From IMG/VR virus record IMGVR_UViG_3300044640_001495, positions 1 to 64,000 of that record: a DNA stretch of 64,000 bases; one strand, 5' to 3'. A program made the position numbers and the translations under genes. Shown here in pieces: positions 21,742 through 59,603 of the stretch (positions within the stretch are counted from its first letter, which is position 1; each line of letters begins with the position of its first letter). Below the pieces are notes generated by a model. That model saw nothing but the letters and a program-made list of their open reading frames with translations. It was not told the origin of the DNA and did no database searches.

Positions 21742-22704
21742 ATGCCAGGAGTATCGAGACAAGGCGCCGATATTGCCGGCGGAACAATCGCAGCAGGTTC
21801 TTCTAATGTTTTTGTAAATGGTTCACCAATTGCAAGACTAGGAGATGCAGTAGCAGGTCACGGTCGTGGTTCGCATAGTAGCCCTACAATGGCTGGATCT
21901 AGTAGTACAGTATATGCTAACGGCATTCTAATATGTAGAGAAGGTGATGCGGCAACCTGTGGCCATCCTGCTACTGGCAGCGGAAATGTGTTCTCCGGAA
22001 CATTTGCATCCTTTGTAGTCCCTCCTGTAGTAATTGCTCCAGCAACACAAGCAGCCATTAACAGACAAACAAGTGCATATGTGGCTAATCCCGGTGCTTA
22101 CAATGTTGCATCTAACGACCAGGTTAAACAAAACTTTCCGGGTACTCCACAAGGAGCAGACGGTGAGAGTTTAATTGACACTGATGTGGTACTAGCCAGT
22201 GACATTCCTTCATTGCTGTCGCAGAATCTCGACGAAGCCGGCAAGGGGATTTGGGAAGAGACAGGAATGGGCGGCCGCGCCAGTAATTCTAGGATCACTG
22301 GTATATGGAAAGAACTTGGATATCCACAGACTGGTGCTTGGCTTACTGACCAAACTGCTTGGTGTATGGGTTATGTAAATTGGGTGTTGAAACGATGCGG
22401 CTACAGATTTGTGCAAACTGCCTGGGCTTTTGATATTAGGGATAAAGCTGCTGCATATAAAGCCGTTAAGATCCCACTTAATCAAGGACAGCCTGGAGAC
22501 ATAGCTTTATGGAGTTATGGTCATGTGAATTTTATCTATACTGCCAGTAGCGGAACATACTCTTTTGTTGGTGGTAATCAAAGCACTAAAGCAAAAAATG
22601 TTAATAATCCCTCGAGCGGGTCTGTGACAAGATCTTGGCCAAGCGGGTATCGAACACCCGGCGACAATTCCTTAATTGGAATATTTAGACCTGTTAAGGA
22701 ATAG
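21742..22704 (+). CDS. PAAR-domain spike tip fused to a CHAP/NlpC-P60-like peptidoglycan hydrolase domain
   Basis: PIARLGD...GH and CREGDAATCGH PAAR motifs; TAWCMGYVNW (Cys) and GHVNF (His) catalytic dyad. Confidence 0.8.
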   Translation: MPGVSRQGADIAGGTIAAGSSNVFVNGSPIARLGDAVAGHGRGSHSSPTMAGSSSTVYANGILICREGDAATCGHPATGSGNVFSGTFASFVVPPVVIAPATQAAINRQTSAYVANPGAYNVASNDQVKQNFPGTPQGADGESLIDTDVVLASDIPSLLSQNLDEAGKGIWEETGMGGRASNSRITGIWKELGYPQTGAWLTDQTAWCMGYVNWVLKRCGYRFVQTAWAFDIRDKAAAYKAVKIPLNQGQPGDIALWSYGHVNFIYTASSGTYSFVGGNQSTKAKNVNNPSSGSVTRSWPSGYRTPGDNSLIGIFRPVKE

Positions 22705-22705: not shown

Positions 22706-23116
22706 ATGAAAAAATTCTTATGGAAAATATTAGGTTTCCTTAGTTTGGGAATGGCCTATGTTGGATTAGTTACACCAGGTATCCCCTACTCAATCTTTGT
22801 GGTGTTTGCGGCCTATTGCTTTGCCAAAGGTAGTCCCAAGATGCATGCCTGGATTTACAATCACAAACTGTTTGGACCGTTCCTTACTAACTGGGGTGAA
22901 AAGCGTGTGTTCCCACAGAAGATGAAATACTTCATGTTGTTCATGATGACAACCAGTTTGATCACCATGTGGTTGACAGCAGTCCCAGTTCGTGGTATAA
23001 TATACACAGCAGTGTTTATGATGCTGGTGGCCATATGGGCTTGGAGATTCCCCAGCTCAGTTGAAGAATATGACAACAGAAAAGCACAAGGTAAAAAAAT
23101 TGGATGGATTAAATGA
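22706..23116 (+). CDS. DUF454/YbaN-family inner membrane protein
   Basis: GLVTPGIP..F...AAYCFAKGSP..H.W...H..FGP..NW motif. Confidence 0.8.
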   Translation: MKKFLWKILGFLSLGMAYVGLVTPGIPYSIFVVFAAYCFAKGSPKMHAWIYNHKLFGPFLTNWGEKRVFPQKMKYFMLFMMTTSLITMWLTAVPVRGIIYTAVFMMLVAIWAWRFPSSVEEYDNRKAQGKKIGWIK

Positions 23117-23763
23117 CACCTACCTATAAGGTCACTCCACTGTTTGGCGTGCCTTTGTACCAGACCAACATTGGGTCATTGGATAAAGGCATGCGCGAAT
23201 TCATTGAAAATCAAGAATATGAACGCATGGCCGCCGACAACGGTGACTATACAGTGAACAAGTATATTTTAGATACTCCAGAACTTGCTCCGTTGAAAGC
23301 TAAAATTATGAAAGCGGCAGATAATTTTATCTACACAGTCTTAGACGTAAAACGCAACATGGATTTTCGCATGGAGAACAGTTGGGTGAATCGTCATTAC
23401 ACAGGCGACTACTCTGGACAACACTATCATGGCAACAGCCTTATCAGTGGTGTTTATTACATAGACACAGGCGTTGATACTGGTGCATTTGTATGTCACA
23501 AAGACAAGGGCAACTATAACCTATGGACCGAAACTGTGAGAGTGGACTTCAATTATCAAGACCACGGTAACGATGCCAAGCTGAATTTCTTCAATGCCGA
23601 TGCTTGGGGTTTGTATCCTGCCAAAAATGACCTAATCATGTTCCCATCCATGATGACTCATTCGGTTGAGGAAAATCAATCGTCAAAGATACGATACAGT
23701 TTGGCCTTTAACCTATTCCCCCGAGGCACAGCCGGTGGTGTAATCAATACCCTAACTGTTTAA
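23113..23763 (+). CDS. 2OG-Fe(II) oxygenase (TIGR02466-like)
   Basis: LFGVPLY, SWVN, HYHGNSLISGVYY, MFPSMMTHSV and RYSLAFN. Confidence 0.85.
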   Translation: MTPTYKVTPLFGVPLYQTNIGSLDKGMREFIENQEYERMAADNGDYTVNKYILDTPELAPLKAKIMKAADNFIYTVLDVKRNMDFRMENSWVNRHYTGDYSGQHYHGNSLISGVYYIDTGVDTGAFVCHKDKGNYNLWTETVRVDFNYQDHGNDAKLNFFNADAWGLYPAKNDLIMFPSMMTHSVEENQSSKIRYSLAFNLFPRGTAGGVINTLTV

Positions 23764-24411
23764 ATGCAACATAGAATAACGCCATTGTTTGCAATACCTT
23801 TGTTTCAAACACATCTAGGCAATCTCAATATCATTACCAAAACTTGGTTAAAAAATCTTGAGTATCCTTATCAACGAACCGGCCACGATGGCACTGACGA
23901 AGATCTCGATGAGGGATCAAAAGGCATGTACATTCTAGACAAACCTCAACTCAAGAATTTGCGTAAACAGATAACAGACGCAATTGATTATTTTGTGCAT
24001 CAATCGTTGGGCGTCGACGATGGTATAAAATTTGATATATCAACCAGCTGGGCCAATCGATATCTAAATGATGAACTTGTGATTAAACATAATCATAAAA
24101 ATTCTATGATCAGTGGAGTCTACTATATAGAAACAACAGCCACCACTGCTCCAATTGTGTTTGAACAGGCATGGTCGCATGTGAACCTGTTTCACTCAAC
24201 AACAACGCCCACGTTTAAAAAAACTCATGTGAACGAGTATAACTCAAGCACACATACCATTTATCCGAGAACTGGAGATCTCTTGTTGTTCCCTTCCCAT
24301 CTAGAACATACAGTTCCCGCAAGTGATTCAACAGACACTAGATACAGTCTAGCATTTAATTGTTTTGCTAGAGGACATATGGGATTTGGAACTGGACAAA
24401 TAACACTATGA
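23764..24411 (+). CDS. 2OG-Fe(II) oxygenase (TIGR02466-like), tandem paralog
   Basis: HNHKNSMISGVYY, LFPSHLEHTV and RYSLAFN. Confidence 0.85.
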   Translation: MQHRITPLFAIPLFQTHLGNLNIITKTWLKNLEYPYQRTGHDGTDEDLDEGSKGMYILDKPQLKNLRKQITDAIDYFVHQSLGVDDGIKFDISTSWANRYLNDELVIKHNHKNSMISGVYYIETTATTAPIVFEQAWSHVNLFHSTTTPTFKKTHVNEYNSSTHTIYPRTGDLLLFPSHLEHTVPASDSTDTRYSLAFNCFARGHMGFGTGQITL

Positions 24412-24656
24412 AAAAAATAACACTAGACCAATTGGTAGAAATTGCCGCAGAAGTAGAAGCTGGCGATCCCGCAGATTGGGGTAAACTTGCTGTTGGGCAA
24501 GAACAGGCATTTAGAATGATTGGCACAAGTATACTTGACATGTTTGACAAAGAAGTGTATACTGATGATGACAAACTGATAATGTTGGCAACTATTACTA
24601 AACTAACAGTTGAAAACATGTTGCTTAATCTAAAGATTATGGATAAAAGTTCATAA
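24408..24656 (+). CDS. hypothetical protein
   Basis: 82 aa ORF with ATGA overlap. Confidence 0.6.
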
Positions 24657-24703
24657 ATAACTCACACAGACAGCATAAATTTACAAACAAGGAAAATAGT
24701 AAA

Positions 24704-24907
24704 ATGGTAACAGGAAAAGTAAAATGGTTTAACGACGCCAAAGGTTTTGGATTCATTACTCCGGACGATGGTGGCGCAGACTTATTTGCTCACTTTTCAC
24801 AGATTAATTCGAGTGGCTTCAAGAGCCTACAAGAAGGACAAAGTGTAAGGTTTGAAGTGACTCAGGGTCAAAAAGGCGAGCAGGCTAGTAATATTCAAGC
24901 TGCCTAA
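24704..24907 (+). CDS. cspA: cold-shock protein
   Basis: [17 protein letters not shown] (RNP1) and LFAHFS (RNP2). Confidence 0.95.
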
Positions 24908-24910
24908 AAA

Positions 24911-25270
24911 ATTGTTGTAGAAGTCTTAAAGTAAGGCATTCTGGACGCGGGTTCGACTCCCGCCAGGTCCACCATAAAGGAGATTAGTATGGATAACGAA
25001 TATAGTGCTCTAGTTGGCTTTATTGTTGTTATCGTAGTATTTGCTCTAGTCCTTTTATGATGGGCCTGCCATGGTTTCGACAGGGTGAGATAGGATAAAG
25101 ATCAACACGTGGGGTCACGTAAAATACAAAAAACGTAAATGCAAACGCAGATACATTCGACTTCAGCGCAATGAGCTTCACTGGAAACACTGTTTCCGGC
25201 AAAAGCAAAGTTGCTCTAGCTGCCTAAAAAACAGCGGTCCGAGGTAGTTATACCTTGTCATCCAAAATAG
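24911..25270 (+). ncRNA. ssrA: circularly permuted (two-piece) tmRNA
   Basis: Acceptor piece ...GGACGCGGGTTCGACTCCCGCCAGGTCCACCA ends at 24974. The coding piece starts GGGCCTG at 25062 and pairs with CAGGTCC, including G3-U70. Tag ORF 25141-25227 encodes ANADTFDFSAMSFTGNTVSGKSKVALAA*. Outer boundaries are approximate. Confidence 0.9.
24989..25060 (+). CDS. 23-aa hydrophobic peptide encoded in the tmRNA intervening segment
   Basis: AAGGAG RBS directly after CCA; MDNEYSALVGFIVVIVVFALVLL*; stop ends 1 nt before the tmRNA 5' end. Confidence 0.55.
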   Translation: MDNEYSALVGFIVVIVVFALVLL

Positions 25271-25271
25271 C

Positions 25272-25298
25272 AGAACCCGCTTCGGCGGGTTTCTTTTT
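25272..25298 (+). terminator. intrinsic terminator after tmRNA
   Basis: agaacccgc-TTCG-gcgggtttcttttt. Confidence 0.88.
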
Positions 25299-25328
25299 GG
25301 CAATATTTCCAAATTATCGTCTCGAAGT

Positions 25329-25371
25329 TGTGCGTGTACGCACATGTTTTGTTTGAAAGTTCACGTATAAT
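25329..25371 (+). promoter_or_regulatory. putative activator-dependent promoter with CRP-family-like palindrome at -41.5
   Basis: TGTGCG-TGTA-CGCACA at 25329-25344, TATAAT at 25366-25371, no consensus -35. Confidence 0.5.
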
Positions 25372-25403
25372 GGTAGGATCATATTATTTAAAAAGGAAAA
25401 ATT

Positions 25404-26300
25404 ATGACAACAACAATTACAATCAAAGACAAACCGATTAACGCAACCTATCAAAATGTTACAGGCCTAACAGGCGGAACCGGAACAGGTGCTGCTTTTG
25501 ATGTTACTAAAACAGACGGAGTATACTCTGTTGTTCTAGACAGTCTAGTAGCCAGTGCAGGATCGGGATACCTTGCTGGTGACACAATCACTCTTGCTGG
25601 TACGGCACTAGGCGGAGCGGCAGCTAACAACTTGATCGTTACTGTTGCTACAGTTGGCACTGCTGGTAAAATTGCTACGTTCGGTGTAGTAGGTACAGGT
25701 CGTGCTGGCGACGGCACAGTTGATATTACAGTTGATGTTACCGGTACTACAGGTATTGACACTTACACAATGGGAGGCGCAAGCACAGAGTTCACAACAA
25801 CTAAAACTGCTAGTAAAGTAACCTTGGCAAGTACCTTGATATCTAACATGGAATTTAATCTTGCTGATCACGAGCGTGTTGTATTCACAGACAAAGCTAT
25901 TGCCTATGATGCCGCAGGTCGTGCAGGTGATGTATACTCATTACTAGCAGCCGCACTTGGTACTGCTGATGTTACTAACGCATACAAAGGCATTGGCATT
26001 GATCTAGCCGACAAAGGTTGGACCAACAAACAATTGGCAGAAGCCCTATTAAACACAGACGTTTACAAAACAGACGCAGGTGGGGTTGGCAATGAAACTT
26101 TCATCAAGCACGTTTACAAAAACGTATTTGGCACTGATGCTGCATTGACACAGGTTACAGACTACACAGTATGGATGACTAACAATAACCTGTCACAAGC
26201 TGATGTTTTGGTTGCCGCAAGTGAGTTAGCAGCTTTTGAAACAACTATTGGGTTGGTCGGTTTAGCCACAACCGGCATTGAATATACTCCTGTTGTATAA
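25404..26300 (+). CDS. surface-protein-like ORF with DUF4214-like C-terminal domain
   Basis: Thr/Gly/Ala-rich beta region, then YSLLAAALG...NETFIKHVYKNVFG...LSQADVL. Confidence 0.65.
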   Translation: MTTTITIKDKPINATYQNVTGLTGGTGTGAAFDVTKTDGVYSVVLDSLVASAGSGYLAGDTITLAGTALGGAAANNLIVTVATVGTAGKIATFGVVGTGRAGDGTVDITVDVTGTTGIDTYTMGGASTEFTTTKTASKVTLASTLISNMEFNLADHERVVFTDKAIAYDAAGRAGDVYSLLAAALGTADVTNAYKGIGIDLADKGWTNKQLAEALLNTDVYKTDAGGVGNETFIKHVYKNVFGTDAALTQVTDYTVWMTNNNLSQADVLVAASELAAFETTIGLVGLATTGIEYTPVV

Positions 26301-34555: not shown

Positions 34556-36457
34556 ATGTCTAAGATCATCGGTATCGATTTAGGTACCACAAACTCATGT
34601 GTAGCTGTTATTGAAAACGGCATCCCCAAAGTAATTGAAAATGCAGAAGGTGCTAGAACAACACCTTCAATCGTTGCCTACGGCAAAGATGAAATTCTCG
34701 TAGGTGCTTCAGCAAAACGTCAATCAGTTACTAACCCCAAAAATACAATCTATGCTTCAAAGCGTTTGATTGGACGCAAGTTTAAAGAGGAAGCTGTTCA
34801 AAAGGACATCAACCTTATGCCCTACGAAATCATGGAAGCCAAGAATGGCGATGCATGGGTTCGTGCTAATGGTCAAGAGTTGGCGCCTCCACAAATCTCA
34901 GCAGAAGTTTTGCGTAAGATGAAAAAGACAGCGGAGGATTATCTAGGTCATGAAGTTACTCAAGCAGTTATCACAGTTCCTGCGTACTTTAACGACAGCC
35001 AAAGACAAGCTACTAAAGACGCTGGACAAATCGCAGGCCTGGAGGTACTCCGTATTATTAACGAGCCTACTGCGGCAGCTCTTGCTTATGGCGTTGATAA
35101 AGCTGATAAAAGAGATAGGAAAATTGCTGTTTACGATCTTGGTGGCGGTACATTCGATGTTTCGATCATCGAAATAGCCAACGTAGATGGAGACAAGCAG
35201 ATCGAAGTATTGAGCACAAACGGCGATACATTCCTTGGCGGTGAAGACTTTGACCAACGTATTATGGATTACTTGGTTGAAGAATTCCGCAAGGATCAAG
35301 GTGTTGATCTAACCAAAGATGTACTTGCTCTACAGCGTTTAAAAGAATCTGCTGAGAAGGCAAAAATTGAATTGTCTAGCTCTGCAAGCACAAGTGTTAA
35401 TTTGCCATACATCACAGCAGACGCAAGTGGCCCTAAGCACATGAATATCACTATTAGCCGTAGCAAGTTAGAACAGCTTGTTGACGAGTTAATCACTCGC
35501 TCAATTGAGCCATGTAAAGTTGCCATGAAAGATGCAGGTGTCACAGCCGCTGACATCGATGAAGTTATTCTTGTTGGTGGTATGACACGTATGCCAAAGG
35601 TACAAGAAGCCGTTGAAAAATTATTTGGCAAGGCACCACGTAAGGATGTTAATCCAGACGAAGCTGTTGCCGCAGGTGCCGCAGTACAAGGTGCTGTTCT
35701 CGGTGGCGATCGTACTGATGTGTTGTTGCTAGATGTGACTCCACTGAGTTTGGGTATTGAAACAATGGGCGGTGTGTTTGCAAAGGTTATTCAAAAGAAC
35801 ACAACCATTCCGACTAAGGGACAGCAGACATTCTCAACAGCAGAAGACAATCAACCTGCGGTGACTATCAAGGTATTCCAAGGTGAGCGTGATCTAGTAC
35901 AATACAACAAATTGCTAGGTGAATTCAATCTTGAAGGTATTCAACCGCAACGTCGTGGACAGCCGCAAATCGAAGTTACATTTGATATTGATGCTAACGG
36001 TATCATGAATATCTCGGCCAAGGACAAGAGCACAGGCAAAGAAAACAAGATCACTATTAAATCAGATAGCGGTCTAAGCAAAGAAGAAATTGAACGCATG
36101 GTACGTGAAGCTGAAGAAAATGCAGAGAGTGATCAAAAAGCTCGAACATTAATTGATGCTCGCAACCAAGCTGAAGCAACTGTACATGAAGTTAAAAAAG
36201 ATCTTGAAGAATTTAAAGATGAATTAACTGATACAGAAAAGACAGAAATCGAGACAGCAGTTAAATCAGTCGAAGACGCTATGAAAGAAGATGACGCTGA
36301 TAAAATTAAAGCTGAACTCGAAAAAGTTTTTCCGGCAATGAAAACATTGTTGGAGAAAAAGCAGGCCAAGGAACAGGCAGCTCAGGCGCCTCAACCAGAA
36401 GCCAAAGCAGATGACAATGTGGTAGACGCTACGTTTACAGAAACTAAGTCTAGCTAA
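34556..36457 (+). CDS. dnaK: Hsp70 chaperone DnaK
   Basis: [26 protein letters not shown] and VTFDIDANG motifs. Confidence 0.98.
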
Positions 36458-36513
36458 TTGTCTTGGGGGCACCTTCGGGGTCCCCATTGTTCTTACTTTA
36501 TAAGGAGACTATT

Positions 36514-36960
36514 ATGAACAATAACGCATTACAAAGAATTGAAGCTATTAATAGAGCACTGATTGGTTTTGACACCATGTTCGACCAAATGGAACGTAGA
36601 TTTTCCAACAGTGTGTCCAACAACTATCCTCCGCACAATATACTCAAGACTGGTGAGAATCAGTATGAGATTCAAATTGCTGTGACAGGATTTGAAAAAT
36701 CGGAAATTTCCGTAACTGTAGAAGCTAATGTGCTTACAGTAAAAGGCGAAGGAGCAGAATCTGTTCGCCATGAGAATCCGGAAATTGTTTACTTGCATCG
36801 TGGTCTAGCCACCCGCGACTTTGTTCGTGAGTTTCCACTTGCTGAACACATGGAAGTTGCAGGTGCAGAAATCCGCAATGGCATGCTGATTGTGAAATTG
36901 ATCCGCAATATTCCCGAGTCTGAAAAGCCACGTGTGATTGACATTGTGGAAGTTAAATAA
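36514..36960 (+). CDS. ibpA: small heat-shock protein (Hsp20/IbpA-like)
   Basis: NYPPHNI, AVTGF, YLHRGLA.R.F and NGML motifs; AAGGAG RBS places the start at 36514. Confidence 0.9.
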   Translation: MNNNALQRIEAINRALIGFDTMFDQMERRFSNSVSNNYPPHNILKTGENQYEIQIAVTGFEKSEISVTVEANVLTVKGEGAESVRHENPEIVYLHRGLATRDFVREFPLAEHMEVAGAEIRNGMLIVKLIRNIPESEKPRVIDIVEVK

Positions 36961-37574: not shown

Positions 37575-38126
37575 ATGAGCCTAAGAGAATTAACCAAAGA
37601 CAATCACACCAATGCAGAAAGACAGGAGTTTGTAAAAATACTGTTTTCAGGAACCATAGATCCCAAACTGTACGCTACATATCTCTACAATCAATTTCCT
37701 ATGTATGAGCTGTTAGAAGTATGTGCCATGCCGCATGGACTGCTGTCTGACATGCCAGGAATCTTACGGGCCAAGGCCATTAGAGCTGACTTTGAGGAAT
37801 TATGGGGATCAGACGAAGAAGATAGACCCAAAATGTGTGCAGTGGTAAAAGAGTATATGGATCATATTATGAAAATTAAAGATGATCCTAAATTGCTAAT
37901 GGCACACCTTTATGTACGACACATGGGCGATCTAGCTGGCGGACAAATGATTGCCAAAAAGGTGCCCGGGGCTGGCAAGTACTATCAATTTGAAGATGCC
38001 GATAGTCTAAAAGCAGCAGTTCGTTTAAAAATCGACGACAGCATGGCCGACGAAGCAAAAGTCTGTTTTGATTTTGCTACACAATTTTTTAAAGAGATGA
38101 TGGAAATTGCAAACATCAACAAGTAA
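37575..38126 (+). CDS. hemO: heme oxygenase
   Basis: LRELTKDNH.NAE (proximal His) and AHLYVRHMGDLAGGQ. Confidence 0.92.
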   Translation: MSLRELTKDNHTNAERQEFVKILFSGTIDPKLYATYLYNQFPMYELLEVCAMPHGLLSDMPGILRAKAIRADFEELWGSDEEDRPKMCAVVKEYMDHIMKIKDDPKLLMAHLYVRHMGDLAGGQMIAKKVPGAGKYYQFEDADSLKAAVRLKIDDSMADEAKVCFDFATQFFKEMMEIANINK

Positions 38127-38799
38127 AGTCTGGCAAACACTCATTGAAGTGCAAGAGCTGTTTATTGAACAGTTCAACAAAACCGGAAAGGAAGTATATG
38201 AAACGGGTATGGATCGCTTCAACAGCCCTGGTTGGGTTAATCGTGTTTGGACCAGTAGCAGTTATCGTAGGGCTCACGTTGATGTTGTGGATGCTAGAGA
38301 AACCAAAGGACTCTGGATGATGCACTGTTGCATCTTCCCGCATACACATAATCCTGCACCGATCTTTGGATTCGATGTAATTGCAGGCAAGAACAAGATC
38401 ACCGGGTGTTTCTATGATTACTCAGCTGCCGGCGATAAAGAACATGCTATGATGGATTGGTTTGCAGAAGAAGCACAAAAGCTAGAGTGGAATAAAACTC
38501 GCAAACTGCCAGATTGGGCAGAACGTATCTTTAGCCCTAGTATGGTAGCTGCTGGGAACGTTAGCGATGAAGAAGAACTAGCACAGATTATTGCCATGGC
38601 AAAAGAGGGCATACAGCACTATTTGAGCACGGTAGCAGAAACCAATAATACAGCTAACGATACTACAGAGGCACAGAACTACTACTGCGAAAATCAAAAG
38701 CAGAACCCGCATACACCACGTGTAATGGTTAGTTTAGGGCTTTCAGAAGAGGACGTTAAACATTTTATTCAAGAATGCCTGTTCCCTGAAATCAGCTAA
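38107..38799 (+). CDS. pcyX: ferredoxin-dependent bilin reductase, PcyX/PcyA type
   Basis: HVDVV (Asp where PcyA has Glu76), MMHCCIFP, PIFGFDV, LPDWA..IFS and QNPHT. Confidence 0.8.
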   Translation: MQTSTSKVWQTLIEVQELFIEQFNKTGKEVYETGMDRFNSPGWVNRVWTSSSYRRAHVDVVDARETKGLWMMHCCIFPHTHNPAPIFGFDVIAGKNKITGCFYDYSAAGDKEHAMMDWFAEEAQKLEWNKTRKLPDWAERIFSPSMVAAGNVSDEEELAQIIAMAKEGIQHYLSTVAETNNTANDTTEAQNYYCENQKQNPHTPRVMVSLGLSEEDVKHFIQECLFPEIS

Positions 38800-40304: not shown

Positions 40305-40787
40305 ATGGTTAAGTTTATAATAGCCACCATATTAATGGCTACAGCATCAGTAGTCAATGGTGCAGAATTACAACACAATTTTAATAGTCCATCCTTTTCA
40401 GGGATTGGATATAGTTCTCACGTTCTAACACTCTATCAATTAGAGACACAGGCCAGAGACAAAAATAAAGCAGCAGCTGATGCTCTTAAAGCAAAGGCAG
40501 AGAGTGATGCATTAAACACTCCGCAGGCTAAGTTTCAAGCAAACTTAGAAAGTCGTATCTATTCACAGTTGGCCAAGCAGATTACAGATAGTTTGTTTGG
40601 TGTTAACGGTGTTCCAGTGTGTACTGCTAACAGTGCAGGTAATTGCGGACAAATGGAAGTTGCCGGTAATAACATCACCTGGAAAGTAGAAGGTACATTT
40701 ATTATTGTTAGAATTGAAAATGTATTAGATCCAAGACAATTTACAGAAATGAAGGTGCCAAGTGGCACATTTGGATTTGGAGGATAA
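40305..40787 (+). CDS. csgF: curli assembly protein CsgF-like
   Basis: Signal peptide then AELQHNFNSPSFSG.G...Q motif; LESRIYSQLAKQI..SLFG. Confidence 0.8.
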   Translation: MVKFIIATILMATASVVNGAELQHNFNSPSFSGIGYSSHVLTLYQLETQARDKNKAAADALKAKAESDALNTPQAKFQANLESRIYSQLAKQITDSLFGVNGVPVCTANSAGNCGQMEVAGNNITWKVEGTFIIVRIENVLDPRQFTEMKVPSGTFGFGG

Positions 40788-40790
40788 TAC

Positions 40791-42026
40791 ATGAAACAAA
40801 CACTATTATCCCTGGCCGTTGTAGCAGTATTGAGTGGGTGCGCATCAAGTTCGGCTATCAAAGAAAAAATAACTGGAAACCAGTTTGACGAACCGAAAGT
40901 CGAGTCTAGTAAATTTCTAAAGAAAGACTCTAATAAATTACAACCACCAGAAGGCGGACCGTTAACAGTGGCAGTGTATGGATTTAGAGATCTAACAGGG
41001 CAACGTAAAAGCCAGCCACTGATTGCGTCATTAAGTTCAGCTGTTACACAAGGTGCTGAAAACTATCTAATCAAGGCCCTACAGGATGTAGGTGATCAAC
41101 GCTGGTTCACAGTACTAGAACGTGTTGGCCTAGAGAACTTGATCAAAGAACGTCAAATGATTCGTCAAATGCGTGAGCAATACCAAGGCCGTGATGCCAA
41201 GATGTTGCCCCCAATGATGTTTGCCGGGATCATCATGGAAGGTGGCATTGTTGGCTACGATAGCAATACACTAACAGGCGGTAGTGGAGTAAGACTGTTT
41301 GGTATTGGGGCAAGCACACAATACCAATCAGACACTGTGACAGTTACCTTAAGAACAGTGAGCGTGTCTACAGGCGAAATTTTAACAACTGTGACAGTAA
41401 CTAAAACAGTGTTAAGTTATATGGACAAAGTGACATTATTGCGATTTGTTGGAGATGGCACAACTTTAGGTGCAAATGCAAATGCATTAGAGGGTGAGAT
41501 CGGCGGCAGCATAAATGAAAGTATCAACAAGGCAATCGACGTAGCTGTACAGGCAGCAGTGATTCAAACTATTAATGAAGGTGCTCGTAAAGGACACTGG
41601 GCATTTAAAAGCAATAAAGTAAGTTCTCCGGTTGCCGTTATTCCGGCGATACCTGCACCAGTAGTAATACCTGCACCAGTAGTAATACCTGCACCAGTAG
41701 TAATATCAGTACCAGTAGTAGAGGAGAAGAAAGATGTCGTGGTTCAATCACAAGCCAAACCCGAAACCAAAACCGAAGCCGTATCCAGTGCCCCCGCAGA
41801 AATAAAGAAAGAAGTTGTACCGGTTGAAAAACTTTCAGGTGAGATGATTTTAAAGGAAGCTTCTTACATTTATAAAGAGCCCGACCTAACAAGTCAAAAA
41901 ACTTGGCAGTTTAAGAAAGGTGCTTTAGTTACAATTATAGGACAAGAGGGTGATTGGGTAGCAGTCAGTGACTCACAAAAACGAAAAGGATTTGTTAATA
42001 AGGATGTACTGGTTAACAAACCTTAA
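40791..42026 (+). CDS. csgG: curli secretion channel CsgG-like lipoprotein with C-terminal Pro/Val linker and SH3-like domain
   Basis: LSG-C lipobox; VAVYGFRDLTGQRK, SSAVTQGA, LERVGLENLIKERQMIR, EGGIVGYD and VTVTLRTVSV.TGEI. Confidence 0.9.
   Translation: MKQTLLSLAVVAVLSGCASSSAIKEKITGNQFDEPKVESSKFLKKDSNKLQPPEGGPLTVAVYGFRDLTGQRKSQPLIASLSSAVTQGAENYLIKALQDVGDQRWFTVLERVGLENLIKERQMIRQMREQYQGRDAKMLPPMMFAGIIMEGGIVGYDSNTLTGGSGVRLFGIGASTQYQSDTVTVTLRTVSVSTGEILTTVTVTKTVLSYMDKVTLLRFVGDGTTLGANANALEGEIGGSINESINKAIDVAVQAAVIQTINEGARKGHWAFKSNKVSSPVAVIPAIPAPVVIPAPVVIPAPVVISVPVVEEKKDVVVQSQAKPETKTEAVSSAPAEIKKEVVPVEKLSGEMILKEASYIYKEPDLTSQKTWQFKKGALVTIIGQEGDWVAVSDSQKRKGFVNKDVLVNKP
41649..41720 (+). repeat. 18-bp coding tandem repeat (IPAPVV x3 plus one degenerate unit)
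   Basis: atacctgcaccagtagta x3, then atatcagtaccagtagta. Confidence 0.9.
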
Positions 42027-42029
42027 TGG

Positions 42030-42077
42030 TGTTGGAATTTTAACATGTTGAAATTTTAACATGTTGAAATTTTAACA
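42030..42077 (+). repeat. three tandem 16-bp quasi-palindromes TGTT-N8-AACA
   Basis: tgttggaattttaaca, tgttgaaattttaaca, tgttgaaattttaaca in the csgG-curlin intergenic region. Confidence 0.92.
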
Positions 42078-42220
42078 GCGGCATTTAATTTCTAGAGTAC
42101 AGAGATTAAATAAAATTACAAGAAGTAAGTCTACGGAGAGGAGTAGATTAGAGAAGTGGTATAATTATAGGTCAATGACCAGGAACTTGTCAGCAAACAA
42201 TAAACTGACATTTTAAAAAA

Positions 42221-43036
42221 ATGAAACAAACAATGACAGGCGGTTGTGGGTTGTCGAGAAAATTACTCACAGTGATGCTGATGAGCTTTGCCACCATAAG
42301 TGGTGCTCAGACAGCAACAGGTCCTAACAAGGTTTATATCGAACAAGTGGGTAGTAGCAATACTATCACAATTGAACAAGTTGGCGGGACTAACAATGTT
42401 GGCGGCGTTACTACAACTGTAGCAACGACAGTAGCAGGAACAGGTATTACTACACTGACTCCAGACGCACCGAGTGCTACTAACTATGGAACTATTACCG
42501 GAAGCACAAACATAGTTGACATTACACAAACAGGAAATGCTAACAGTAGCCAATACAATATTCGTGGAAGTAATAACAGCTACACTACTAATATGTTAGG
42601 CAATGGTAATCAAACTAGATTAACTATTGGCAATACCAACAACGCTACAAACAGCCAAAACGTTATTACAGAACAAATTATCGGTAATAACAATATGATT
42701 CTACAAGATCTAGTTGGTAGCAATATTACTACTAACACAGTTTTGGATGGAGATAATAACCAAGTTACTAGTAGTTTGTTAAGCAGCAGAGGTAGTGTAT
42801 CAAATGTAGCTAATGGAAACGCTAACGTGTTCAACATCCAGCAATTAGATGCAGCGGGTGCTAACGGACATGTTCTTGCTATGATGACCACAGGCGACTA
42901 CAACAGCATCACCACACAGCAACAAGGCACCAACGATACCACAGTTAATATACAAACACAGGGTAGCAACAACACTATCACAGTTCGTACAAGTAGTTCA
43001 GCTATTGTATCTCCAGCCACAGCGATTGCGAGATAA
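42221..43036 (+). CDS. curlin-repeat protein (CsgA/CsgB-like)
   Basis: Signal peptide; repeated x-Q-x-G-x-x-N units (IEQVGSSN, ITQTGNAN, QQQGTND, QTQGSNN); Asn/Thr/Gly-rich. Confidence 0.8.
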   Translation: MKQTMTGGCGLSRKLLTVMLMSFATISGAQTATGPNKVYIEQVGSSNTITIEQVGGTNNVGGVTTTVATTVAGTGITTLTPDAPSATNYGTITGSTNIVDITQTGNANSSQYNIRGSNNSYTTNMLGNGNQTRLTIGNTNNATNSQNVITEQIIGNNNMILQDLVGSNITTNTVLDGDNNQVTSSLLSSRGSVSNVANGNANVFNIQQLDAAGANGHVLAMMTTGDYNSITTQQQGTNDTTVNIQTQGSNNTITVRTSSSAIVSPATAIAR

Positions 43037-43038: not shown

Positions 43039-44133
43039 ATGCGTGTCTTGTTGTTAGCCCTACTGCTAACAGTGGCCAGCCCTTCTTGGGCTGGCATTGG
43101 CACGGTTTCAGAAAACAAAGGCACAGCCTGTGAAGTTGAACGCAATAAGAAAAAGATGTCAGGAGTTAAGGGTGCTGAAATTGAAAGCATGGACACTTAT
43201 ACAACCGGTGCTTGTGTAAGTAATATAACATTCAAAGATGATACCAAAGTCAAAGTTACAGAAAACAGCAGATTGCTTATCGACGATTTTGTTTTCGATC
43301 CTAAGAAATCAGATGCAGGCAAGCTCGCGCTCAAAGTTGGTATGGGCACTGTCCGATACGCTAGCGGACAAATTGCTAAAAATAATCCGCAACAGGTAAA
43401 CATCAAAACTCCAACAGCTACAGTAGCAGTGCGTGGCACTGATTTCACTATGACTGTGGATGAAACTGGGCAAAGTCTTATCATGCTGGTTCCTAGTTGT
43501 AAAGACGAAAAAGACGTTAAACAATTTGAACTAGATGAACAACGATGTAAGGTTGGCAGTATCACAGTGACTACAGGCATTGGATCAGTGACCTTAGACA
43601 AGGCATTCGAAGCTACCTATGTCACCAGTGCTTCAATGATGCCAACTTCCCCAGTTATTGTCAATACCGTTGAAGGCAAGATAGGTAATAACTTAATCAT
43701 TGTTAAGCCTCAAGAAGTCTTGCAGGCAATTAAAGATGCCGGCAGATCAAAACGTGATACTGAATTAGAAGAACTCGAGGCAGACGCCCAACGACAAATA
43801 GCTATGCGTGTTGAAAAAGCCAACGAAAAAAGCGACCCTGTACTATTGCCAGATACATTTTCTGATGGTAAGAAAGGATGTAATCCAAGTACTACTGTTT
43901 GCGTGGCATGGGAAAAGAACGACTCTCCTGATATACAAAGTAAAGGCAAAGGTACAGCCTATAGAAGTAATACAGATCATTATGCTGAAGTTAAAACCAC
44001 AGGCTATGATTCAAACACATTTGTGTCTATAAGCCACAATGATCAATATGCGTTTACGTTTGTTGGTAGCGGAGATCCAGGCGGTAATGTAGTAAACATT
44101 GTACAAAAGACTGGAGTGTTAAGACGTCCATGA
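43039..44133 (+). CDS. FecR-domain exported protein
   Basis: Signal peptide; ITFKDDTKVKVTENSRLLIDDF, GTVRYASG and IKTPTATVAVRGTDF. Confidence 0.85.
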   Translation: MRVLLLALLLTVASPSWAGIGTVSENKGTACEVERNKKKMSGVKGAEIESMDTYTTGACVSNITFKDDTKVKVTENSRLLIDDFVFDPKKSDAGKLALKVGMGTVRYASGQIAKNNPQQVNIKTPTATVAVRGTDFTMTVDETGQSLIMLVPSCKDEKDVKQFELDEQRCKVGSITVTTGIGSVTLDKAFEATYVTSASMMPTSPVIVNTVEGKIGNNLIIVKPQEVLQAIKDAGRSKRDTELEELEADAQRQIAMRVEKANEKSDPVLLPDTFSDGKKGCNPSTTVCVAWEKNDSPDIQSKGKGTAYRSNTDHYAEVKTTGYDSNTFVSISHNDQYAFTFVGSGDPGGNVVNIVQKTGVLRRP

Positions 44134-45785: not shown

Positions 45786-45802
45786 AACAGCATAAATATT
45801 TC

Positions 45803-56424: not shown

Positions 56425-56471
56425 TAGTATAATTACTAGATATGATAAGTAATAGTACGCAAGGGGCAGCA

Positions 56472-57029
56472 GTGAAAAAAATAGACGAATTTAACGCCAG
56501 CGATCGTATTGGCATAAAATTACTGGAAAATTCGGTTCATTTTCTAACCGGCGAAATTACCGAAGAAAACGTCAACGAATGCATCAAATGGTTGGTCTAC
56601 GAAAATCTAGAAGCTAAAGAAAAAGTTCTTACTCTGTATGTTAATTCATCGGGCGGAGATCTTTACCAGGCATTTGCTCTCATTGACATCATGCGAAACA
56701 GCAAACACATTGTTCGCACTGTGGGTATAGGCAGTGTTATGAGTGCTGCATTTTTGATTTTTACCAGTGGCGATCATGGAGAAAGACACATTGCAGCCAA
56801 CACAGGTATTATGTGTCATCAATTCTCCGGCGGAACTGACGCCAAGTTTCACGACCTAAAAGCAGAAATGAAAGAGAATGAGATGTTAAACAAGAAGATG
56901 GTTGACATACTTAAGAACGCAACCGGATTAGCCCCATCAAGAATTAAAACAAAACTGTTGCCAGCCAGTGATGTTTATCTAACAGCACAAGAAGCCATCG
57001 AACTCGGCATTGCCGATCATTTAATATAA
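56472..57029 (+). CDS. clpP: ClpP-like ATP-dependent protease proteolytic subunit
   Basis: LYVNSSGG, GSVMSAAF (Ser), MCHQF (His) and DVYLTAQEAIELGIAD. Confidence 0.88.
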   Translation: MKKIDEFNASDRIGIKLLENSVHFLTGEITEENVNECIKWLVYENLEAKEKVLTLYVNSSGGDLYQAFALIDIMRNSKHIVRTVGIGSVMSAAFLIFTSGDHGERHIAANTGIMCHQFSGGTDAKFHDLKAEMKENEMLNKKMVDILKNATGLAPSRIKTKLLPASDVYLTAQEAIELGIADHLI

Positions 57030-58124: not shown

Positions 58125-58213
58125 GGACGAGTGCGCTGAATTGGTTGAAGGCAACGGACTGTAAATCCGCCACATAAGAAACATTGTAGGTTCGACTCCT
58201 ACCTCGTCCACCA
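58125..58213 (+). tRNA. tRNA-Tyr(GTA)
   Basis: Acceptor ggacgag/ctcgtcc, loop CT-GTA-AA, long variable arm, CCA. Confidence 0.9.
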
Positions 58214-58222
58214 AACGAATGG

Positions 58223-58251
58223 TTGACTTTTTTTTGGATTGGTGTTATACT
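58223..58251 (+). promoter_or_regulatory. sigma70-type promoter
   Basis: TTGACT-N17-TATACT. Confidence 0.75.
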
Positions 58252-58281
58252 ATTAATACTGTGAACTTAAAAGGAAATCAA

Positions 58282-58476
58282 ATGCAATCGTATCGTGTTT
58301 ATGTTGAAGTGGGTTCGTATGCAGGTGAAGGTACCAGCGGTGCTTTTCAAACTGAGAGCCTTCGACAATTTGAAACTGTAGTAAATGCCCAGACATCCGG
58401 AGATGCTGTGCGTATAGCAGAAGCCCAATATGGTGGCCAAGAACGGTGCCGTGTCACGTTCCGCGGCGTTGCTTAA
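58282..58476 (+). CDS. small hypothetical protein within the tRNA array
   Basis: AAGGA RBS; own promoter; 64 aa. Confidence 0.6.
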   Translation: MQSYRVYVEVGSYAGEGTSGAFQTESLRQFETVVNAQTSGDAVRIAEAQYGGQERCRVTFRGVA

Positions 58477-58484
58477 CAATTTTA

Positions 58485-58559
58485 GGTCTGTTCGTATAGA
58501 GGTTATTACTGCGGATTGTCTATCCGCTTACGGGGGTTCGATTCCCCCACAGACCGCCA
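58485..58559 (+). tRNA. tRNA-Asp(GTC)
   Basis: gcgga-TT GTC TA-tccgc; T-loop TTCGATT; CCA. Confidence 0.92.
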
Positions 58560-58566
58560 AGTTTAT

Positions 58567-58643
58567 TCCTCGGTAGCACAGTTGGTAGTTGCGCGGCACT
58601 GTTAATGCCGATGTCGGAAGTTCGAGCCTTCCCCGGGGAGCCA
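58567..58643 (+). tRNA. tRNA-Asn(GTT)
   Basis: cggca-CT GTT AA-tgccg; CCA. Confidence 0.92.
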
Positions 58644-58648
58644 ATAAT

Positions 58649-58724
58649 GTATCCTTAGCTCAATTGGCAGAGCGCTGGTCTCCAAAACCAGAGGTTCGCG
58701 GTTCGAGGCCGTGAGGGTACGCCA
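58649..58724 (+). tRNA. tRNA-Trp(CCA)
   Basis: ctggt-CT CCA AA-accag; CCA. Confidence 0.92.
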
Positions 58725-58732
58725 AGTTTTAT

Positions 58733-58807
58733 GGACCGTTCGTCTATCGGTTAGGACACTAGGTTTTCATCCTGGTAAGAGGGGTTCGACTCCCCTACGG
58801 TCTTCCA
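58733..58807 (+). tRNA. tRNA-Glu(TTC)
   Basis: ctagg-TT TTC AT-cctgg; CCA. Confidence 0.92.
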
Positions 58808-58814
58808 AATTTAT

Positions 58815-58892
58815 GTGGCGGTGGCAGAGAGGCCCATTGCAACGGATTGCAAATCCGTAAAATCGTGAGTTCAAATCTCACCCGCCACTCCA
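58815..58892 (+). tRNA. tRNA-Cys(GCA)
   Basis: acgga-TT GCA AA-tccgt; U73; CCA. Confidence 0.9.
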
Positions 58893-58942
58893 AACATGGC
58901 TCCACTCGTTCGACATAGTCGATGCTGTGGAGTTTTTCTTTT

Positions 58943-59023: not shown

Positions 59024-59028
59024 ATCAT

Positions 59029-59315: not shown

Positions 59316-59337
59316 ATTTTTTAAAAGGAGATCTGTC

Positions 59338-59597: not shown

Positions 59598-59603
59598 AGT
59601 TGT

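What the first reader, a model, noticed from the sequence alone, without database searches (positions are those of the whole stretch)
24911..25270. Phage-encoded circularly permuted two-piece tmRNA with an unusually long 28-residue tag
Seen: the 3' acceptor/T-arm piece ending CCA (24974) lies upstream of the 5' piece (GGGCCTG, 25062). The two form an Ala acceptor stem with G3-U70, and attctg/cagggt gives the next helix. The resume codon GCA at 25141 encodes ANADTFDFSAMSFTGNTVSGKSKVALAA*. Established: permuted tmRNAs occur in Alphaproteobacteria and some cyanobacterial and betaproteobacterial lineages. Typical tags are about 10 residues, and C-terminal LAA is the ClpX degron. Inference: the long tag may carry extra adaptor or protease-routing information, possibly for the phage's own ClpP. 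Standard annotation often misses permuted genes.
Basis: partly seen in the sequence, partly recalled or inferred. Interest (0 to 1): 0.85.

Follow-up and report, generated by a model that had tools for sequence, protein, structure and literature searches.

The report
Jumbo-phage two-piece tmRNA, long tag
A 353-kb freshwater phage carries a genuine circularly permuted ribosome-rescue RNA (tmRNA) whose 28-residue tag is one of a conserved class of long phage tags, and the spacer that is normally discarded holds a tiny protein-coding gene.

Summary
Rfam scores it 120.5 bits (tmRNA_permuted) and 102 bits (beta_tmRNA). The window is the start of a 353-kb IMG/VR phage contig.

Phage two-piece tmRNAs are already known, so the kind is not new. 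Three things go beyond what I found described:

1. **The long tag is a class.** 44 of 92 distinct tag-coding sequences in related viral contigs encode 22-33 residues. They read as a conserved prefix (ANA[D/N]TF[D/E][F/Y]...) placed before a canonical short tag (..NDxxFALAA). The frame is always kept, indels come in threes, and third codon positions vary most.

2. **The intervening segment is a swappable cassette.** 35 of 76 distinct versions hold a Shine-Dalgarno plus ATG mini-ORF that fills the segment (4.2 expected). In the window this is a 23-residue hydrophobic peptide at 24989-25060. Its stop codon ends one base before the mature 5' G.

3. **The gene appears to be co-transcribed with an upstream cold-shock gene.**

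Processing, alanylation and tagging are not shown; the metatranscriptome contigs are compatible but inconclusive. The "phage ClpP" exists with an intact triad, but it may be a head-maturation protease.

The parts
24535..24563 (+). Promoter-like site TTGACA-17-TATACT, a candidate start of a csp-ssrA transcript
   Evidence: 11 of 12 consensus matches. No promoter-like or terminator-like site lies between it and the tmRNA. Function is inferred only.
24704..24907 (+). Cold-shock-domain protein gene (67 aa). Its stop codon lies 5 nt before the first tmRNA helix.
   Evidence: Pfam CSD, E 9.3e-31. A CSD gene sits directly upstream in 42 of 71 long-tag loci and 7 of 73 short-tag loci. RNA-library contigs bridge 24524-24974.
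24913..24974 (+). Acceptor piece. It holds the P2 3'-side strands (TGTTG 24913-17, CATTCTG 24937-43), the T-arm (24947-63), the acceptor 3' strand (24964-70), discriminator A and the encoded CCA (24972-74). The 5' end is not defined.
   Evidence: and P2 covariation. The 32-mer 24943-24974 is identical in more than 120 viral contigs.
24975..25061 (+). Intervening segment (87 nt), removed on maturation. It is a hairpin whose closing stem pairs TAAAGG.GATTAG with CTAGTCCTTTTA, and it ends in TGAT.
   Evidence: Fold of -20 kcal/mol, z -1.67. In the precursor the stem stacks on the acceptor stem. The segment differs among relatives that share the same tag.
24977..24982 (+). Shine-Dalgarno AAGGAG, 6 nt before the ATG of the mini-ORF. 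It lies within the closing stem.
   Evidence: Sequence. An SD core is present in 24 of 35 ORF-bearing segments and 2 of 41 others.
24989..25060 (+). Mini-ORF of 23 codons, MDNEYSALVGFIVVIVVFALVLL (a hydrophobic, membrane-type peptide). Its stop TGA ends 1 nt before the mature 5' G.
   Evidence: Six distinct homologues have indels in threes and synonymous changes at conserved G, F, D, A and L.
25062..25298 (+). Coding piece. It holds the acceptor 5' strand (25062-68), the D-loop-like TGGTTTCGAC, P2 strands (CAGGGTG 25081-87, CAACA 25103-07), a hairpin at 25107-25120 where PK1 would be, the tag frame, a conserved 3' element and the terminator.
   Evidence: RNA-library contig depth is high from 25055 to 25276 and zero beyond 25314.
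25141..25227 (+). Tag reading frame, from resume codon GCA to stop TAA: ANADTFDFSAMSFTGNTVSGKSKVALAA*
   Evidence: In 25 distinct family members the variable columns by codon position are 13/12/23 of 33, and all indels are in threes.
25181..25199 (+). Hairpin inside the tag frame (GGAAAC-ACT-GTTTCC)
   Evidence: Sequence. The alternative forms GGAAAC/GTTTCC and GGTAAC/GTTACT, read from the codon alignment, are compensatory. Some relatives have a different hairpin, ACCG-TTCG-CGGT.
25233..25270 (+). Conserved 3' element (CGAGGTAGTTATACCTTGT...AAAATAGC), possibly a pseudoknot
   Evidence: Conserved across tag classes. The pairing was not resolved.
25273..25298 (+). Intrinsic terminator GAACCCGC-TTCG-GCGGGTTT plus a T-run
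   Evidence: Relatives have different but equivalent GC hairpins, mostly with UUCG loops. RNA contig depth ends here.
56442..57029 (+). Not shown to be linked to the tmRNA.
   Evidence: Pfam CLP_protease, E 7.2e-35. Ser, His and Asp align with Coxiella ClpP 3q7h. The best PHROG is a head-maturation protease, E 3.2e-27.

Best explanation
This is a functional ssrA gene of a roughly 353-kb freshwater jumbo phage, in the circularly permuted (two-piece) form.

**Inferred transcription and maturation.**
- It is transcribed with the upstream cold-shock gene from a promoter near 24535 and ends at the terminator at 25273-25298.
- Host tRNA-processing enzymes release two RNAs: RNase P cuts at 25061/25062, and 3' maturation trims back to the encoded CCA at 24974.
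- The acceptor piece (about 24913-24974) and the coding piece (25062 to about 25298) stay together through P1 and P2.

**Inferred action.**
- Host AlaRS charges the RNA through G3:U70.
- Host SmpB and EF-Tu deliver it to stalled ribosomes.
- Translation resumes at GCA 25141 and adds 28 residues.

**The tag (pattern shown).** The class consists of a conserved, aromatic-rich prefix (ANADTFDFSAMSFTGNTVSG in the window) placed before the canonical C-terminal degron (..ALAA). My best guess for its effect is a composite degron. It keeps ClpX recognition and adds either spacing or a second recognition element for an adaptor or for a Lon-type protease. That would make phage-tagged chains better or differently routed substrates than host-tagged ones.

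**The intervening segment (pattern shown, function inferred).** It is not junk. It is a cassette site flanked by the ultra-conserved halves of the tRNA-like domain. In the window it carries a small membrane-type peptide gene. Its ribosome-binding site is buried in the cassette's closing stem, and its stop codon abuts the RNase P site.
For: **Identity.**
- ARAGORN calls tmRNA*, and Rfam gives 120.5 and 102 bits.
- All tRNA-like-domain elements are present in the sequence.
- The P2 proximal helix is canonical in 82 of 82 distinct relatives, with four pair types at two positions. The distal helix switches T-A to C-G, 47 against 32.

**Selection on the tag peptide.**
- 25 distinct family-A sequences keep the frame.
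- Variable columns by codon position are 13/12/23, and conserved F, G, T and N residues use synonymous codons.
- 44 of 92 distinct tag sequences are long, and all end in ..LAA-type tails.

**Expression.**
- Freshwater metatranscriptome contigs cover both pieces at depths of 120-276. Depth over the window's intervening segment is 0.28-2.5 in one run and 0 in the others.
- Depth is zero beyond the terminator and 0-4.6 over the next gene.

**Operon.**
- The csp stop codon lies 5 nt before P2 with no terminator between them.
- The CSD gene is adjacent in 42 of 71 long-tag loci.

**Cassette.**
- 35 of 76 distinct segments have a spanning ORF, against 4.2 +/- 2.1 in shuffles.
- An SD core is found in 24 of 35 ORF-bearing segments and 2 of 41 others.
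- There are synonymous changes within the peptide family.
- One cassette ORF matches phrog_13558 at E 1e-12.
- The same tag occurs with three different cassettes.

**Context.** DnaK, Hsp20, a ClpP-fold protease, a cold-shock protein and 23 tRNAs are in the same window.
Against: - No direct evidence exists for cleavage at 24974 or 25062, for alanylation, or for tagging.
- The gap in RNA contig depth over the intervening segment is at least partly an artefact. Co-occurring relatives carry other cassettes, seen as loose ends at 24974 and 24978. Contigs also have no true ends.
- No SmpB was found among the window ORFs of 150 aa or more. Function therefore depends on the host protein.
- The window type has only a 4-5-bp hairpin where PK1 is expected.
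- Part of the tag's conservation coincides with an RNA hairpin that covaries. Not all of the constraint is on the peptide.
- The mini-ORF's SD is base-paired in the predicted fold. The conserved C-terminal LVLL codons double as the closing stem.
- The host is unknown. The one genome scan found only standard tmRNAs that share the 3' end.
Confidence: 0.8

Rival explanations
1. The extension of the tag frame is a by-product of an RNA element inserted into the mRNA-like domain, such as a helix-5-like hairpin or a partial duplication. It is translated, but the extra residues have no peptide-level role. The effective degron is only the C-terminal ALAA.
For: - A hairpin lies inside the frame at 25181-25199 and shows a compensatory change (GGAAAC/GTTTCC against GGTAAC/GTTACT).
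- The Rfam beta model aligns its terminal hairpin to this spot. Its tag-end region aligns separately to 25211-25271, which looks non-collinear or duplication-like.
Against: - Residues outside the hairpin (T-F-D-F-S-A-M-S-F) are conserved with synonymous codon variation.
- The divergent families B and C keep a similar prefix pattern without the same hairpin.
- The prefix was kept in frame in all 44 distinct long sequences.
Confidence: 0.15
2. The long tag routes tagged proteins to the phage's own ClpP at 56442-57029.
For: - A ClpP-fold protein is present, with Ser, His and Asp aligned to bacterial ClpP over residues 23-194.
- Other proteostasis genes (DnaK, Hsp20) are nearby.
Against: - ClpP does not read tags. 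That is done by an unfoldase or adaptor, and neither ClpX nor SspB was found among the window ORFs of 150 aa or more.
- The best PHROG matches are head-maturation proteases (E 3.2e-27), ahead of ATP-dependent protease families (E 7.4e-14).
- The protease lies 31 kb from the tmRNA.
Confidence: 0.1
3. The gene is a host-derived passenger, an attachment-site remnant, or a decoy that only titrates SmpB. The precedent is the tRNA-like-domain-only tmRNA of mycobacteriophage DS6A. On this reading it does not tag.
For: - Phage-borne tmRNA fragments and a TLD-only inhibitor are on record (PMC4131195, PMC9004378).
- No phage SmpB was seen in the window.
- PK1 is reduced to a hairpin.
Against: - Both pieces are complete, with a full tag frame under purifying selection.
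- The gene is kept in most sister phages.
- Both pieces are abundant in RNA libraries.
- No bacterial species representative holds a permuted gene with this 3' half.
Confidence: 0.05

Closest known systems
Betaproteobacterial two-piece tmRNA (Rfam RF01850; Sharkady and Williams 2004, as cited in PMC9004378)
   Same: - Permuted gene order and tRNA-like domain.
- Inter-piece P2 helix.
- Resume context TAAAT|GCA AAC.
- Tag ending in ALAA.
- It scores above the family's gathering threshold (102 against 84 bits).
   Different: - It is phage-borne.
- The tag is 28 residues rather than about 10.
- The 3' part does not align collinearly with the model.
- The window type has a hairpin where PK1 would be.
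- It has no promoter of its own and follows a csp gene.
- Some sister genes score better with the alpha model.
- No bacterial species representative shares the acceptor half in a permuted gene.
Phage-encoded two-piece tmRNAs, such as OM43 phage Melnitz and the pelagimyophages (PMC9004378)
   Same: - They are aquatic phages with a complete permuted ssrA. That paper found 53 two-piece genes among 133 unique phage tmRNAs, 50 of them from marine or aquatic phages.
- Those phages also carry curli CsgG/CsgF genes, as this window does.
   Different: - Melnitz's gene is of alphaproteobacterial type with a glutamine riboswitch. No riboswitch is detected here.
- The main text and the three held supplementary files, as searched, contain no tag sequences or tag-length analysis. 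I found no description of a coding intervening segment.
- No GenBank phage shares this gene at the DNA level.
Long ssrA tags of Mycoplasma (27 aa, adapted to Lon; PMC8403727, citing Gur and Sauer 2008)
   Same: A tag of nearly the same length. The extra part is rich in aromatic and hydrophobic residues. In the long phage tags the FYW fraction of the extension is 0.15.
   Different: - There is no sequence relationship.
- The phage tag keeps the ClpX-type ALAA end, which Mycoplasma tags lack.
- Protease specificity has not been tested here.
tmRNA genes with cargo in the removed segment: a tRNA-Ala gene or a repetitive element in a permuted intervening sequence, and homing-endonuclease genes in tmRNA group I introns (PMC11915505)
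   Same: The removed part of a tmRNA gene can carry other genetic material.
   Different: Here the cargo is a set of Shine-Dalgarno-led small protein genes. Many encode single hydrophobic helices. They occur in about 40% of distinct versions and are swapped between genes with different tags. I found no report of this.

Membership tests
tmRNA, permuted (two-piece) form | tRNA-Ala-like acceptor stem with G3:U70, a discriminator A and a CCA end | tested here: met
   GGGCCTG 25062-68 pairs with CAGGTCC 24964-70, and G25064 pairs with T24968. A 24971 is followed by CCA 24972-74.
tmRNA, permuted (two-piece) form | T-arm with a GGTTCGA-type loop, and a D-loop-like GGTTTCGAC after the acceptor 5' strand | tested here: met
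   Stem and loop at 24947-24963, and TGGTTTCGAC at 25072-25081. Both are aligned to the covariance models.
tmRNA, permuted (two-piece) form | Gene order: acceptor (3') part, then intervening segment, then coding (5') part | tested here: met
   ARAGORN tmRNA*. RF04321 is matched end to end, positions 1-213, with an insertion at the intervening segment.
tmRNA, permuted (two-piece) form | Inter-piece helix P2 supported by covariation | tested here: met
   The proximal helix is canonical in 82 of 82 sequences, with up to four pair types per position. The distal helix switches T-A to C-G. The middle part of P2 could not be aligned reliably.
tmRNA, permuted (two-piece) form | Tag reading frame that opens with an Ala resume codon in the conserved context and ends with a hydrophobic ..LAA tail and a stop | tested here: met
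   TAAAT|GCA at 25141, and ..VALAA followed by TAA. The frame is conserved with an excess of third-position change.
tmRNA, permuted (two-piece) form | Pseudoknot PK1 between P2 and the resume codon | tested here: inconclusive
   The window type has only the hairpin at 25107-25120. Sister types have longer, PK-like inserts. No pseudoknot modelling was done.
tmRNA, permuted (two-piece) form | Cleavage of the precursor into two RNAs | tested here: inconclusive
   RNA-library contigs cover both pieces and barely cover the intervening segment. One contig starts at 25063. Cassette variation among strains would give the same picture.
tmRNA, permuted (two-piece) form | Alanylation, SmpB-dependent ribosome entry and tagging of non-stop products | not testable with these tools
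   These need biochemistry or genetics. No SmpB was found among the window ORFs of 150 aa or more.
Rfam beta_tmRNA (RF01850) | Score at or above the curated gathering threshold | tested here: met
   102 bits against 84. The tag end and 3' domain align only as a separate weak hit. Some sister genes fit alpha_tmRNA better.
ClpXP ssrA degron | C-terminal ..LAA with a free carboxylate | tested here: met
   The tag ends in VALAA. Degradation itself is not testable here.
ClpP (ATP-dependent Clp protease proteolytic subunit), for the protein at 56442-57029 | ClpP fold with a Ser-His-Asp triad | tested here: met
   Pfam E 7.2e-35. The triad residues align with 3q7h.
ClpP (ATP-dependent Clp protease proteolytic subunit), for the protein at 56442-57029 | Works with a Clp ATPase rather than as a capsid maturation protease | tested here: inconclusive
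   Best PHROG matches are head-maturation proteases (3.2e-27), ahead of ATP-dependent protease families (7.4e-14). No ClpX is in the window.

The most novel reading that the evidence does not exclude
The intervening segment of phage permuted tmRNA genes is a dedicated, recombination-prone niche for micro-protein genes, and this coupling has a function.

The cassette ORF is led by a ribosome-binding site buried in the precursor's closing stem. It then ends in one of two ways. In 19 distinct versions it ends in a stop codon one base before the RNase P cut. In 11 it has no stop before that cut.

Once the precursor is processed, the mini-message would therefore be stop-proximal or stop-less. Its peptide could be a built-in substrate of the same tmRNA, which would yield a membrane peptide fused to the long tag. 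Conversely, ribosomes on the cassette would block formation of the acceptor stem. tmRNA maturation would then report on translation capacity.
Probability: 0.12. Interest if true: 0.85.

Novelty: new variant of a known kind. Interest (0 to 1): 0.6.

Why it matters
Phage tmRNAs have been listed in surveys but hardly analysed. Three points follow from this locus.

- **A phage-specific tag.** A widespread group of freshwater jumbo phages keeps a conserved 20-residue prefix in front of the normal degradation tag. Phages therefore seem to change what happens to rescued nascent chains, rather than simply supplying more rescue capacity. This gives a concrete, testable handle on phage control of host proteostasis: which protease or adaptor reads the prefix.
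- **Overlooked small genes.** The discarded spacer of a structural RNA gene serves as a cassette site for small protein genes, many of them membrane-type. This adds a class of overlooked phage micro-proteins. It also gives an example of genes nested in an RNA-processing substrate.
- **Annotation.** ARAGORN missed the gene in 36 of 80 sister loci, and the 23-codon ORF is too short for gene callers.

Tried and rejected
- **GenBank phages, DNA search with 24600-25400.** It returned only cold-shock gene matches and one 43-nt T-arm hit, so there is no described relative.
- **Host inference from the 32-nt acceptor half in one genome per species.** The 11 hits are nearly all standard one-piece tmRNAs of Saprospiraceae and others that merely share the 3' end. 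ARAGORN called none in the eleventh.
- **Minimum-free-energy co-folding of the two pieces and RNAalifold on 82 relatives.** Only P1, the T-arm and proximal P2 were recovered. The MFE pairs the P2 strand elsewhere, so I relied on covariation counts instead.
- **Processing from metatranscriptomes.** Only assembled contigs were available. The coverage gap over the intervening segment and a contig start at 25063 are compatible with processing, but cassette polymorphism explains them equally well. I rejected this as proof.
- **The 13-nt repeat GCTGCCTAAAAAA** at the end of the csp gene (24897-24909) and at the end of the tag (25216-25228). I considered it as a duplication scar. It is shared only by the closest relatives and degrades to a generic ..GC[CT]TAA elsewhere, so I did not pursue it.
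- **Tag peptide against PDB sequences.** Nothing fell below E = 1.
- **Riboswitch as in phage Melnitz, and a cspA thermoregulator.** No Rfam hit even at E <= 1.
- **Supplement of PMC9004378.** It lists phage tmRNAs without tags, so no comparison of tag lengths was possible.
- **Exact look-up of the 23-residue peptide.** It is not in the protein collection, although longer cassette ORFs are.
Full report

Yes.
- The T-arm is at 24947-24963.
- The acceptor 3' strand is CAGGTCC at 24964-70, then discriminator A, then an encoded CCA ending at 24974.
- The matching 5' strand, GGGCCTG at 25062-68, lies 87 nt downstream. The seven pairs include G3:U70.
- The next helix is CATTCTG 24937-43 with CAGGGTG 25081-87.

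ARAGORN calls a permuted tmRNA at 24882-25318 with the tag ANADTFDFSAMSFTGNTVSGKSKVALAA*. Rfam matches RF04321 tmRNA_permuted end to end at 120.5 bits against a gathering score of 47, E 5.8e-23. It also matches RF01850 beta_tmRNA at 102 bits against 84. The consensus TAAAT|GCA AAC around the resume codon is matched exactly, which fixes the frame.

**2. What genome is this?**

The neighbouring gene at 25404-26300 recovers 80 related viral contigs. One of them, IMGVR_UViG_3300044640_001495 (353,123 bp), has the gene at the same coordinates as the window. The window is therefore the first 64 kb of that contig.

The window contents fit a jumbo phage:
- 23 tRNA genes, and ribonucleotide reductase, DnaK, Hsp20, curli CsgG/CsgF, heme oxygenase plus bilin reductase, PAAR-CHAP and a cell-wall hydrolase
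- a weak virion-protein match
- almost all genes on one strand

Runs that hold the locus are freshwater and lake metatranscriptomes. No GenBank phage shares the locus at the DNA level.

**3. Anatomy of the locus.**

A strong promoter-like site (TTGACA-17-TATACT, 24535-24563) precedes a cold-shock-domain gene (24704-24907; Pfam E 9.3e-31). The stop codon of that gene lies 5 nt before the first tmRNA helix, and no terminator intervenes. The only intrinsic terminator is at 25273-25292 plus a T-run.

RNA-library contigs bridge csp and the acceptor piece (24524-24974). Depth falls to zero beyond 25314. I infer a csp-ssrA transcript.

Sister genes with short tags instead carry their own TTGACA/TATAAT promoter a few bases before the acceptor piece. 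A CSD gene is directly upstream in 42 of 71 long-tag loci but in only 7 of 73 short-tag loci. Relatedness may explain part of this association.

**4. Comparative support for the RNA.**

The 32-nt acceptor half is identical in more than 120 viral contigs. Among 82 distinct relatives:
- the proximal P2 helix is canonical in 82 of 82 at every position, with C-G, T-A, A-T and G-C alternating at one pair and A-T, G-C, C-G and G-T at the next
- the distal helix switches T-A to C-G, 47 against 32

Between P2 and the resume codon the window type has only a short hairpin (25107-25120). Other body types have larger, pseudoknot-like inserts. After the tag come a conserved element at 25233-25270 and terminators that differ in sequence but not in form.

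ARAGORN called no tmRNA in 36 of 80 sister loci. Rfam finds one in 7 of the 12 such loci I tested. The gene is therefore near-universal in this phage group and is under-called.

**5. The long tag is a conserved class.**

Of 92 distinct tag-coding sequences, 44 encode 22-33 residues and 48 encode 8-15. The long tags fall into three families:
- A: ANADTFDFSAMSFTGNTV..
- B: ANANTFEYFQVDFDV..
- C: ANANTTGTVKVTMGKNFRFG..

They read as a prefix placed in front of a whole canonical short tag. Examples are ..RG-AANESRFALAA and ..TAM-NDEQFAIAA, compared with the short tag ANDEQFALAA of sister phages. In the window that canonical part has drifted to ..GKSKVALAA.

Evidence that the prefix is translated and constrained as a peptide, from the 25 distinct family-A sequences:
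- all indels are multiples of three
- variable columns by codon position are 13/12/23 of 33
- invariant residues use several synonymous codons (F as TTT/TTC, G as GGT/GGA/GGC, T as ACT/ACC/ACA, N as AAC/AAT)

One caveat applies. Codons 15-19 form a hairpin (25181-25199) with a compensatory change in relatives, so RNA structure contributes to conservation there. The tag has no significant match to any solved protein.

For scale, the commonest tag length in the 97,179-sequence tmRNA database is 10 aa (PMC11915505). The 27-aa Mycoplasma tag is called unusually long and is thought to be adapted to Lon (PMC8403727).

**6. The intervening segment is a gene cassette.**

Across relatives the segment between CCA and the mature 5' G is highly variable. 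It is exchanged independently of the tag.
- The window's tag occurs with an 87-nt, a 101-nt and a 61-nt segment.
- One 101-nt segment occurs with five different tags.

The segments come in two sorts. The first is a non-coding hairpin, such as TAAAGCATACT...AGTATGCTTTTGAT. The second has a Shine-Dalgarno sequence, an ATG at positions 10-15 and an ORF that fills the segment.

The coding case rests on these counts:
- 35 of 76 distinct segments of 60 nt or more have such an ORF, against 4.2 +/- 2.1 (maximum 10) in dinucleotide shuffles.
- An SD core (AGGA, GGAG or GAGG) occurs in 24 of the 35 and in 2 of the 41 others.
- 19 ORFs end exactly 1 nt before the mature 5' G, and 11 have no stop within the segment.
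- 15 of the 35 peptides contain a strongly hydrophobic 15-residue stretch.
- Every segment of 60 nt or more but one, coding or not, ends in TGAT or TAAT; the exception ends TGAC.

In the window the ORF is 24989-25060, MDNEYSALVGFIVVIVVFALVLL, with AAGGAG 6 nt upstream. Its five distinct homologues differ by whole codons and by synonymous changes at conserved positions.

One cassette ORF in a relative matches a phage protein family (phrog_13558, E 1e-12). Longer cassette ORFs are already in public protein sets as hypothetical proteins, one of them on 34 contigs.

The closing stem of the cassette pairs the SD region with the last codons. In the precursor it stacks on the acceptor stem. Translation and RNA folding or processing should therefore compete.

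I found no report of protein-coding intervening segments. The database paper mentions only a tRNA gene and a repetitive element in such segments (PMC11915505).

**7. How it most likely works.**

What the sequence and the comparisons show:
- a complete permuted tmRNA gene
- a conserved inter-piece helix
- a translated-looking long tag frame
- presence of both pieces in RNA libraries
- a cassette ORF class

What I infer:
- maturation by host RNase P and 3' trimming
- charging by AlaRS
- dependence on host SmpB, since none was found among the window ORFs of 150 aa or more
- addition of 28 residues to stalled chains

For the prefix I favour a composite degron. The ALAA end keeps ClpX recognition. 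The aromatic-rich prefix would add spacing between adaptor and unfoldase sites. From my own knowledge of the E. coli SspB/ClpX work, more spacing improves delivery. Alternatively it adds a determinant for a second protease of the Lon type, as proposed for Mycoplasma. This is a guess with perhaps 40% weight. The by-product rival cannot be excluded.

The protein at 56442-57029 has the fold and the triad. However, ClpP does not read tags, no ClpX is present, and phage-family matches favour head-maturation proteases.

**8. Novelty.**

Phage two-piece tmRNAs are known. One survey counted 53 two-piece genes among 133 unique phage tmRNAs, mostly aquatic (PMC9004378). The tmRNA database lists 79 phage sequences (PMC11915505). 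Huge phages are also noted to carry tmRNAs (PMC7162821).

The gene is therefore a member of a known kind. The variant features are the conserved prefix-plus-tag class, the csp linkage and the coding cassettes. I did not find these described.

I rate the finding "new variant of a known kind" with moderate to high interest.

Noticed in passing
window 58125-62198: A cluster of 23 tRNA genes on the + strand covers most amino acids. Rfam confirms 22 of them. The ARAGORN call tRNA-Ile(tat) at 61003-61094 (92 nt) has no Rfam tRNA match, so it may be unusual or false.
   Followed up: no
window 34556-36960 and 56442-57029: A proteostasis set: a full-length DnaK (Hsp70, E 2e-257) immediately followed by an Hsp20, and a ClpP-fold protease 20 kb further on. 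Huge metagenomic phages of 480-735 kb also encode DnaK homologues.
   Followed up: partly
window 40305-43036: Curli-type secretion genes: CsgF (40305-40787), CsgG with a C-terminal SH3 domain (40791-42026), and a protein with a weak curlin repeat (42221-43036). The same oddity is reported for pelagimyophages and OM43 phage Melnitz, which also carry two-piece tmRNAs (PMC9004378).
   Followed up: no
window 37575-38799: Heme oxygenase followed by a ferredoxin-dependent bilin reductase. This is a pigment-biosynthesis pair in a phage whose tmRNA looks proteobacterial rather than cyanobacterial.
   Followed up: no
window 43039-47845: Signalling-type genes in a row: a FecR-domain protein, a protein with an F5/8 type C (discoidin) domain, and a CHASE2-sensor adenylate/guanylate cyclase of 680 aa.
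   Followed up: no
window 23113-24411: Two tandem 2OG-Fe(II) oxygenase genes (216 and 215 aa) lie just upstream of the csp-ssrA unit.
   Followed up: no
L030/L052/L056, L041/L054 and L086/L091 (intervening segments; sequences): Some non-coding intervening segments in relatives contain T-arm-like hairpins (GTAGGTTCGAGTCCTAC, GTGGTTCGATTCCAC, CGGGTTTGAGTCCCG). These may be tRNA-like mini-elements nested in the removed segment.
   Followed up: no
all related loci; window 25058-25061: Every intervening segment of 60 nt or more but one, coding or not, ends in TGAT or TAAT, which puts a stop triplet at positions -4 to -2 before the mature 5' G; the exception ends TGAC. This could be an RNase P or leader-pairing signal, or a guard against ribosomes entering the tmRNA.
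   Followed up: partly
window 24897-24909 and 25216-25228: The 13-mer GCTGCCTAAAAAA ends both the cold-shock gene and the tag frame. It is shared only among the closest relatives, so it is probably chance or a recent event.
   Followed up: yes
L018, L016, L011, L075, L084, L114 (101-nt intervening segment): A Cys-rich cassette ORF (MKYTALCPSCFNRFSW..KHKCFS) has no stop before the processing site. Read by eye from the sequences, it would run on into the conserved tmRNA 5' end in the unprocessed precursor (..DGACHGFDRVR*). The same cassette occurs with long and short tags.
   Followed up: partly
L127, L133, L143, L163, L167, L176, L182: ARAGORN calls no tmRNA in these sister loci, but Rfam RF04321 scores 99-112 bits. 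Three of them (L143, L176, L182) match the alpha_tmRNA model and not the beta model at gathering threshold.
   Followed up: partly
window 21742-22704: A PAAR-motif protein fused to a CHAP peptidoglycan hydrolase domain, likely a tail-tip or puncturing-device lysin.
   Followed up: no
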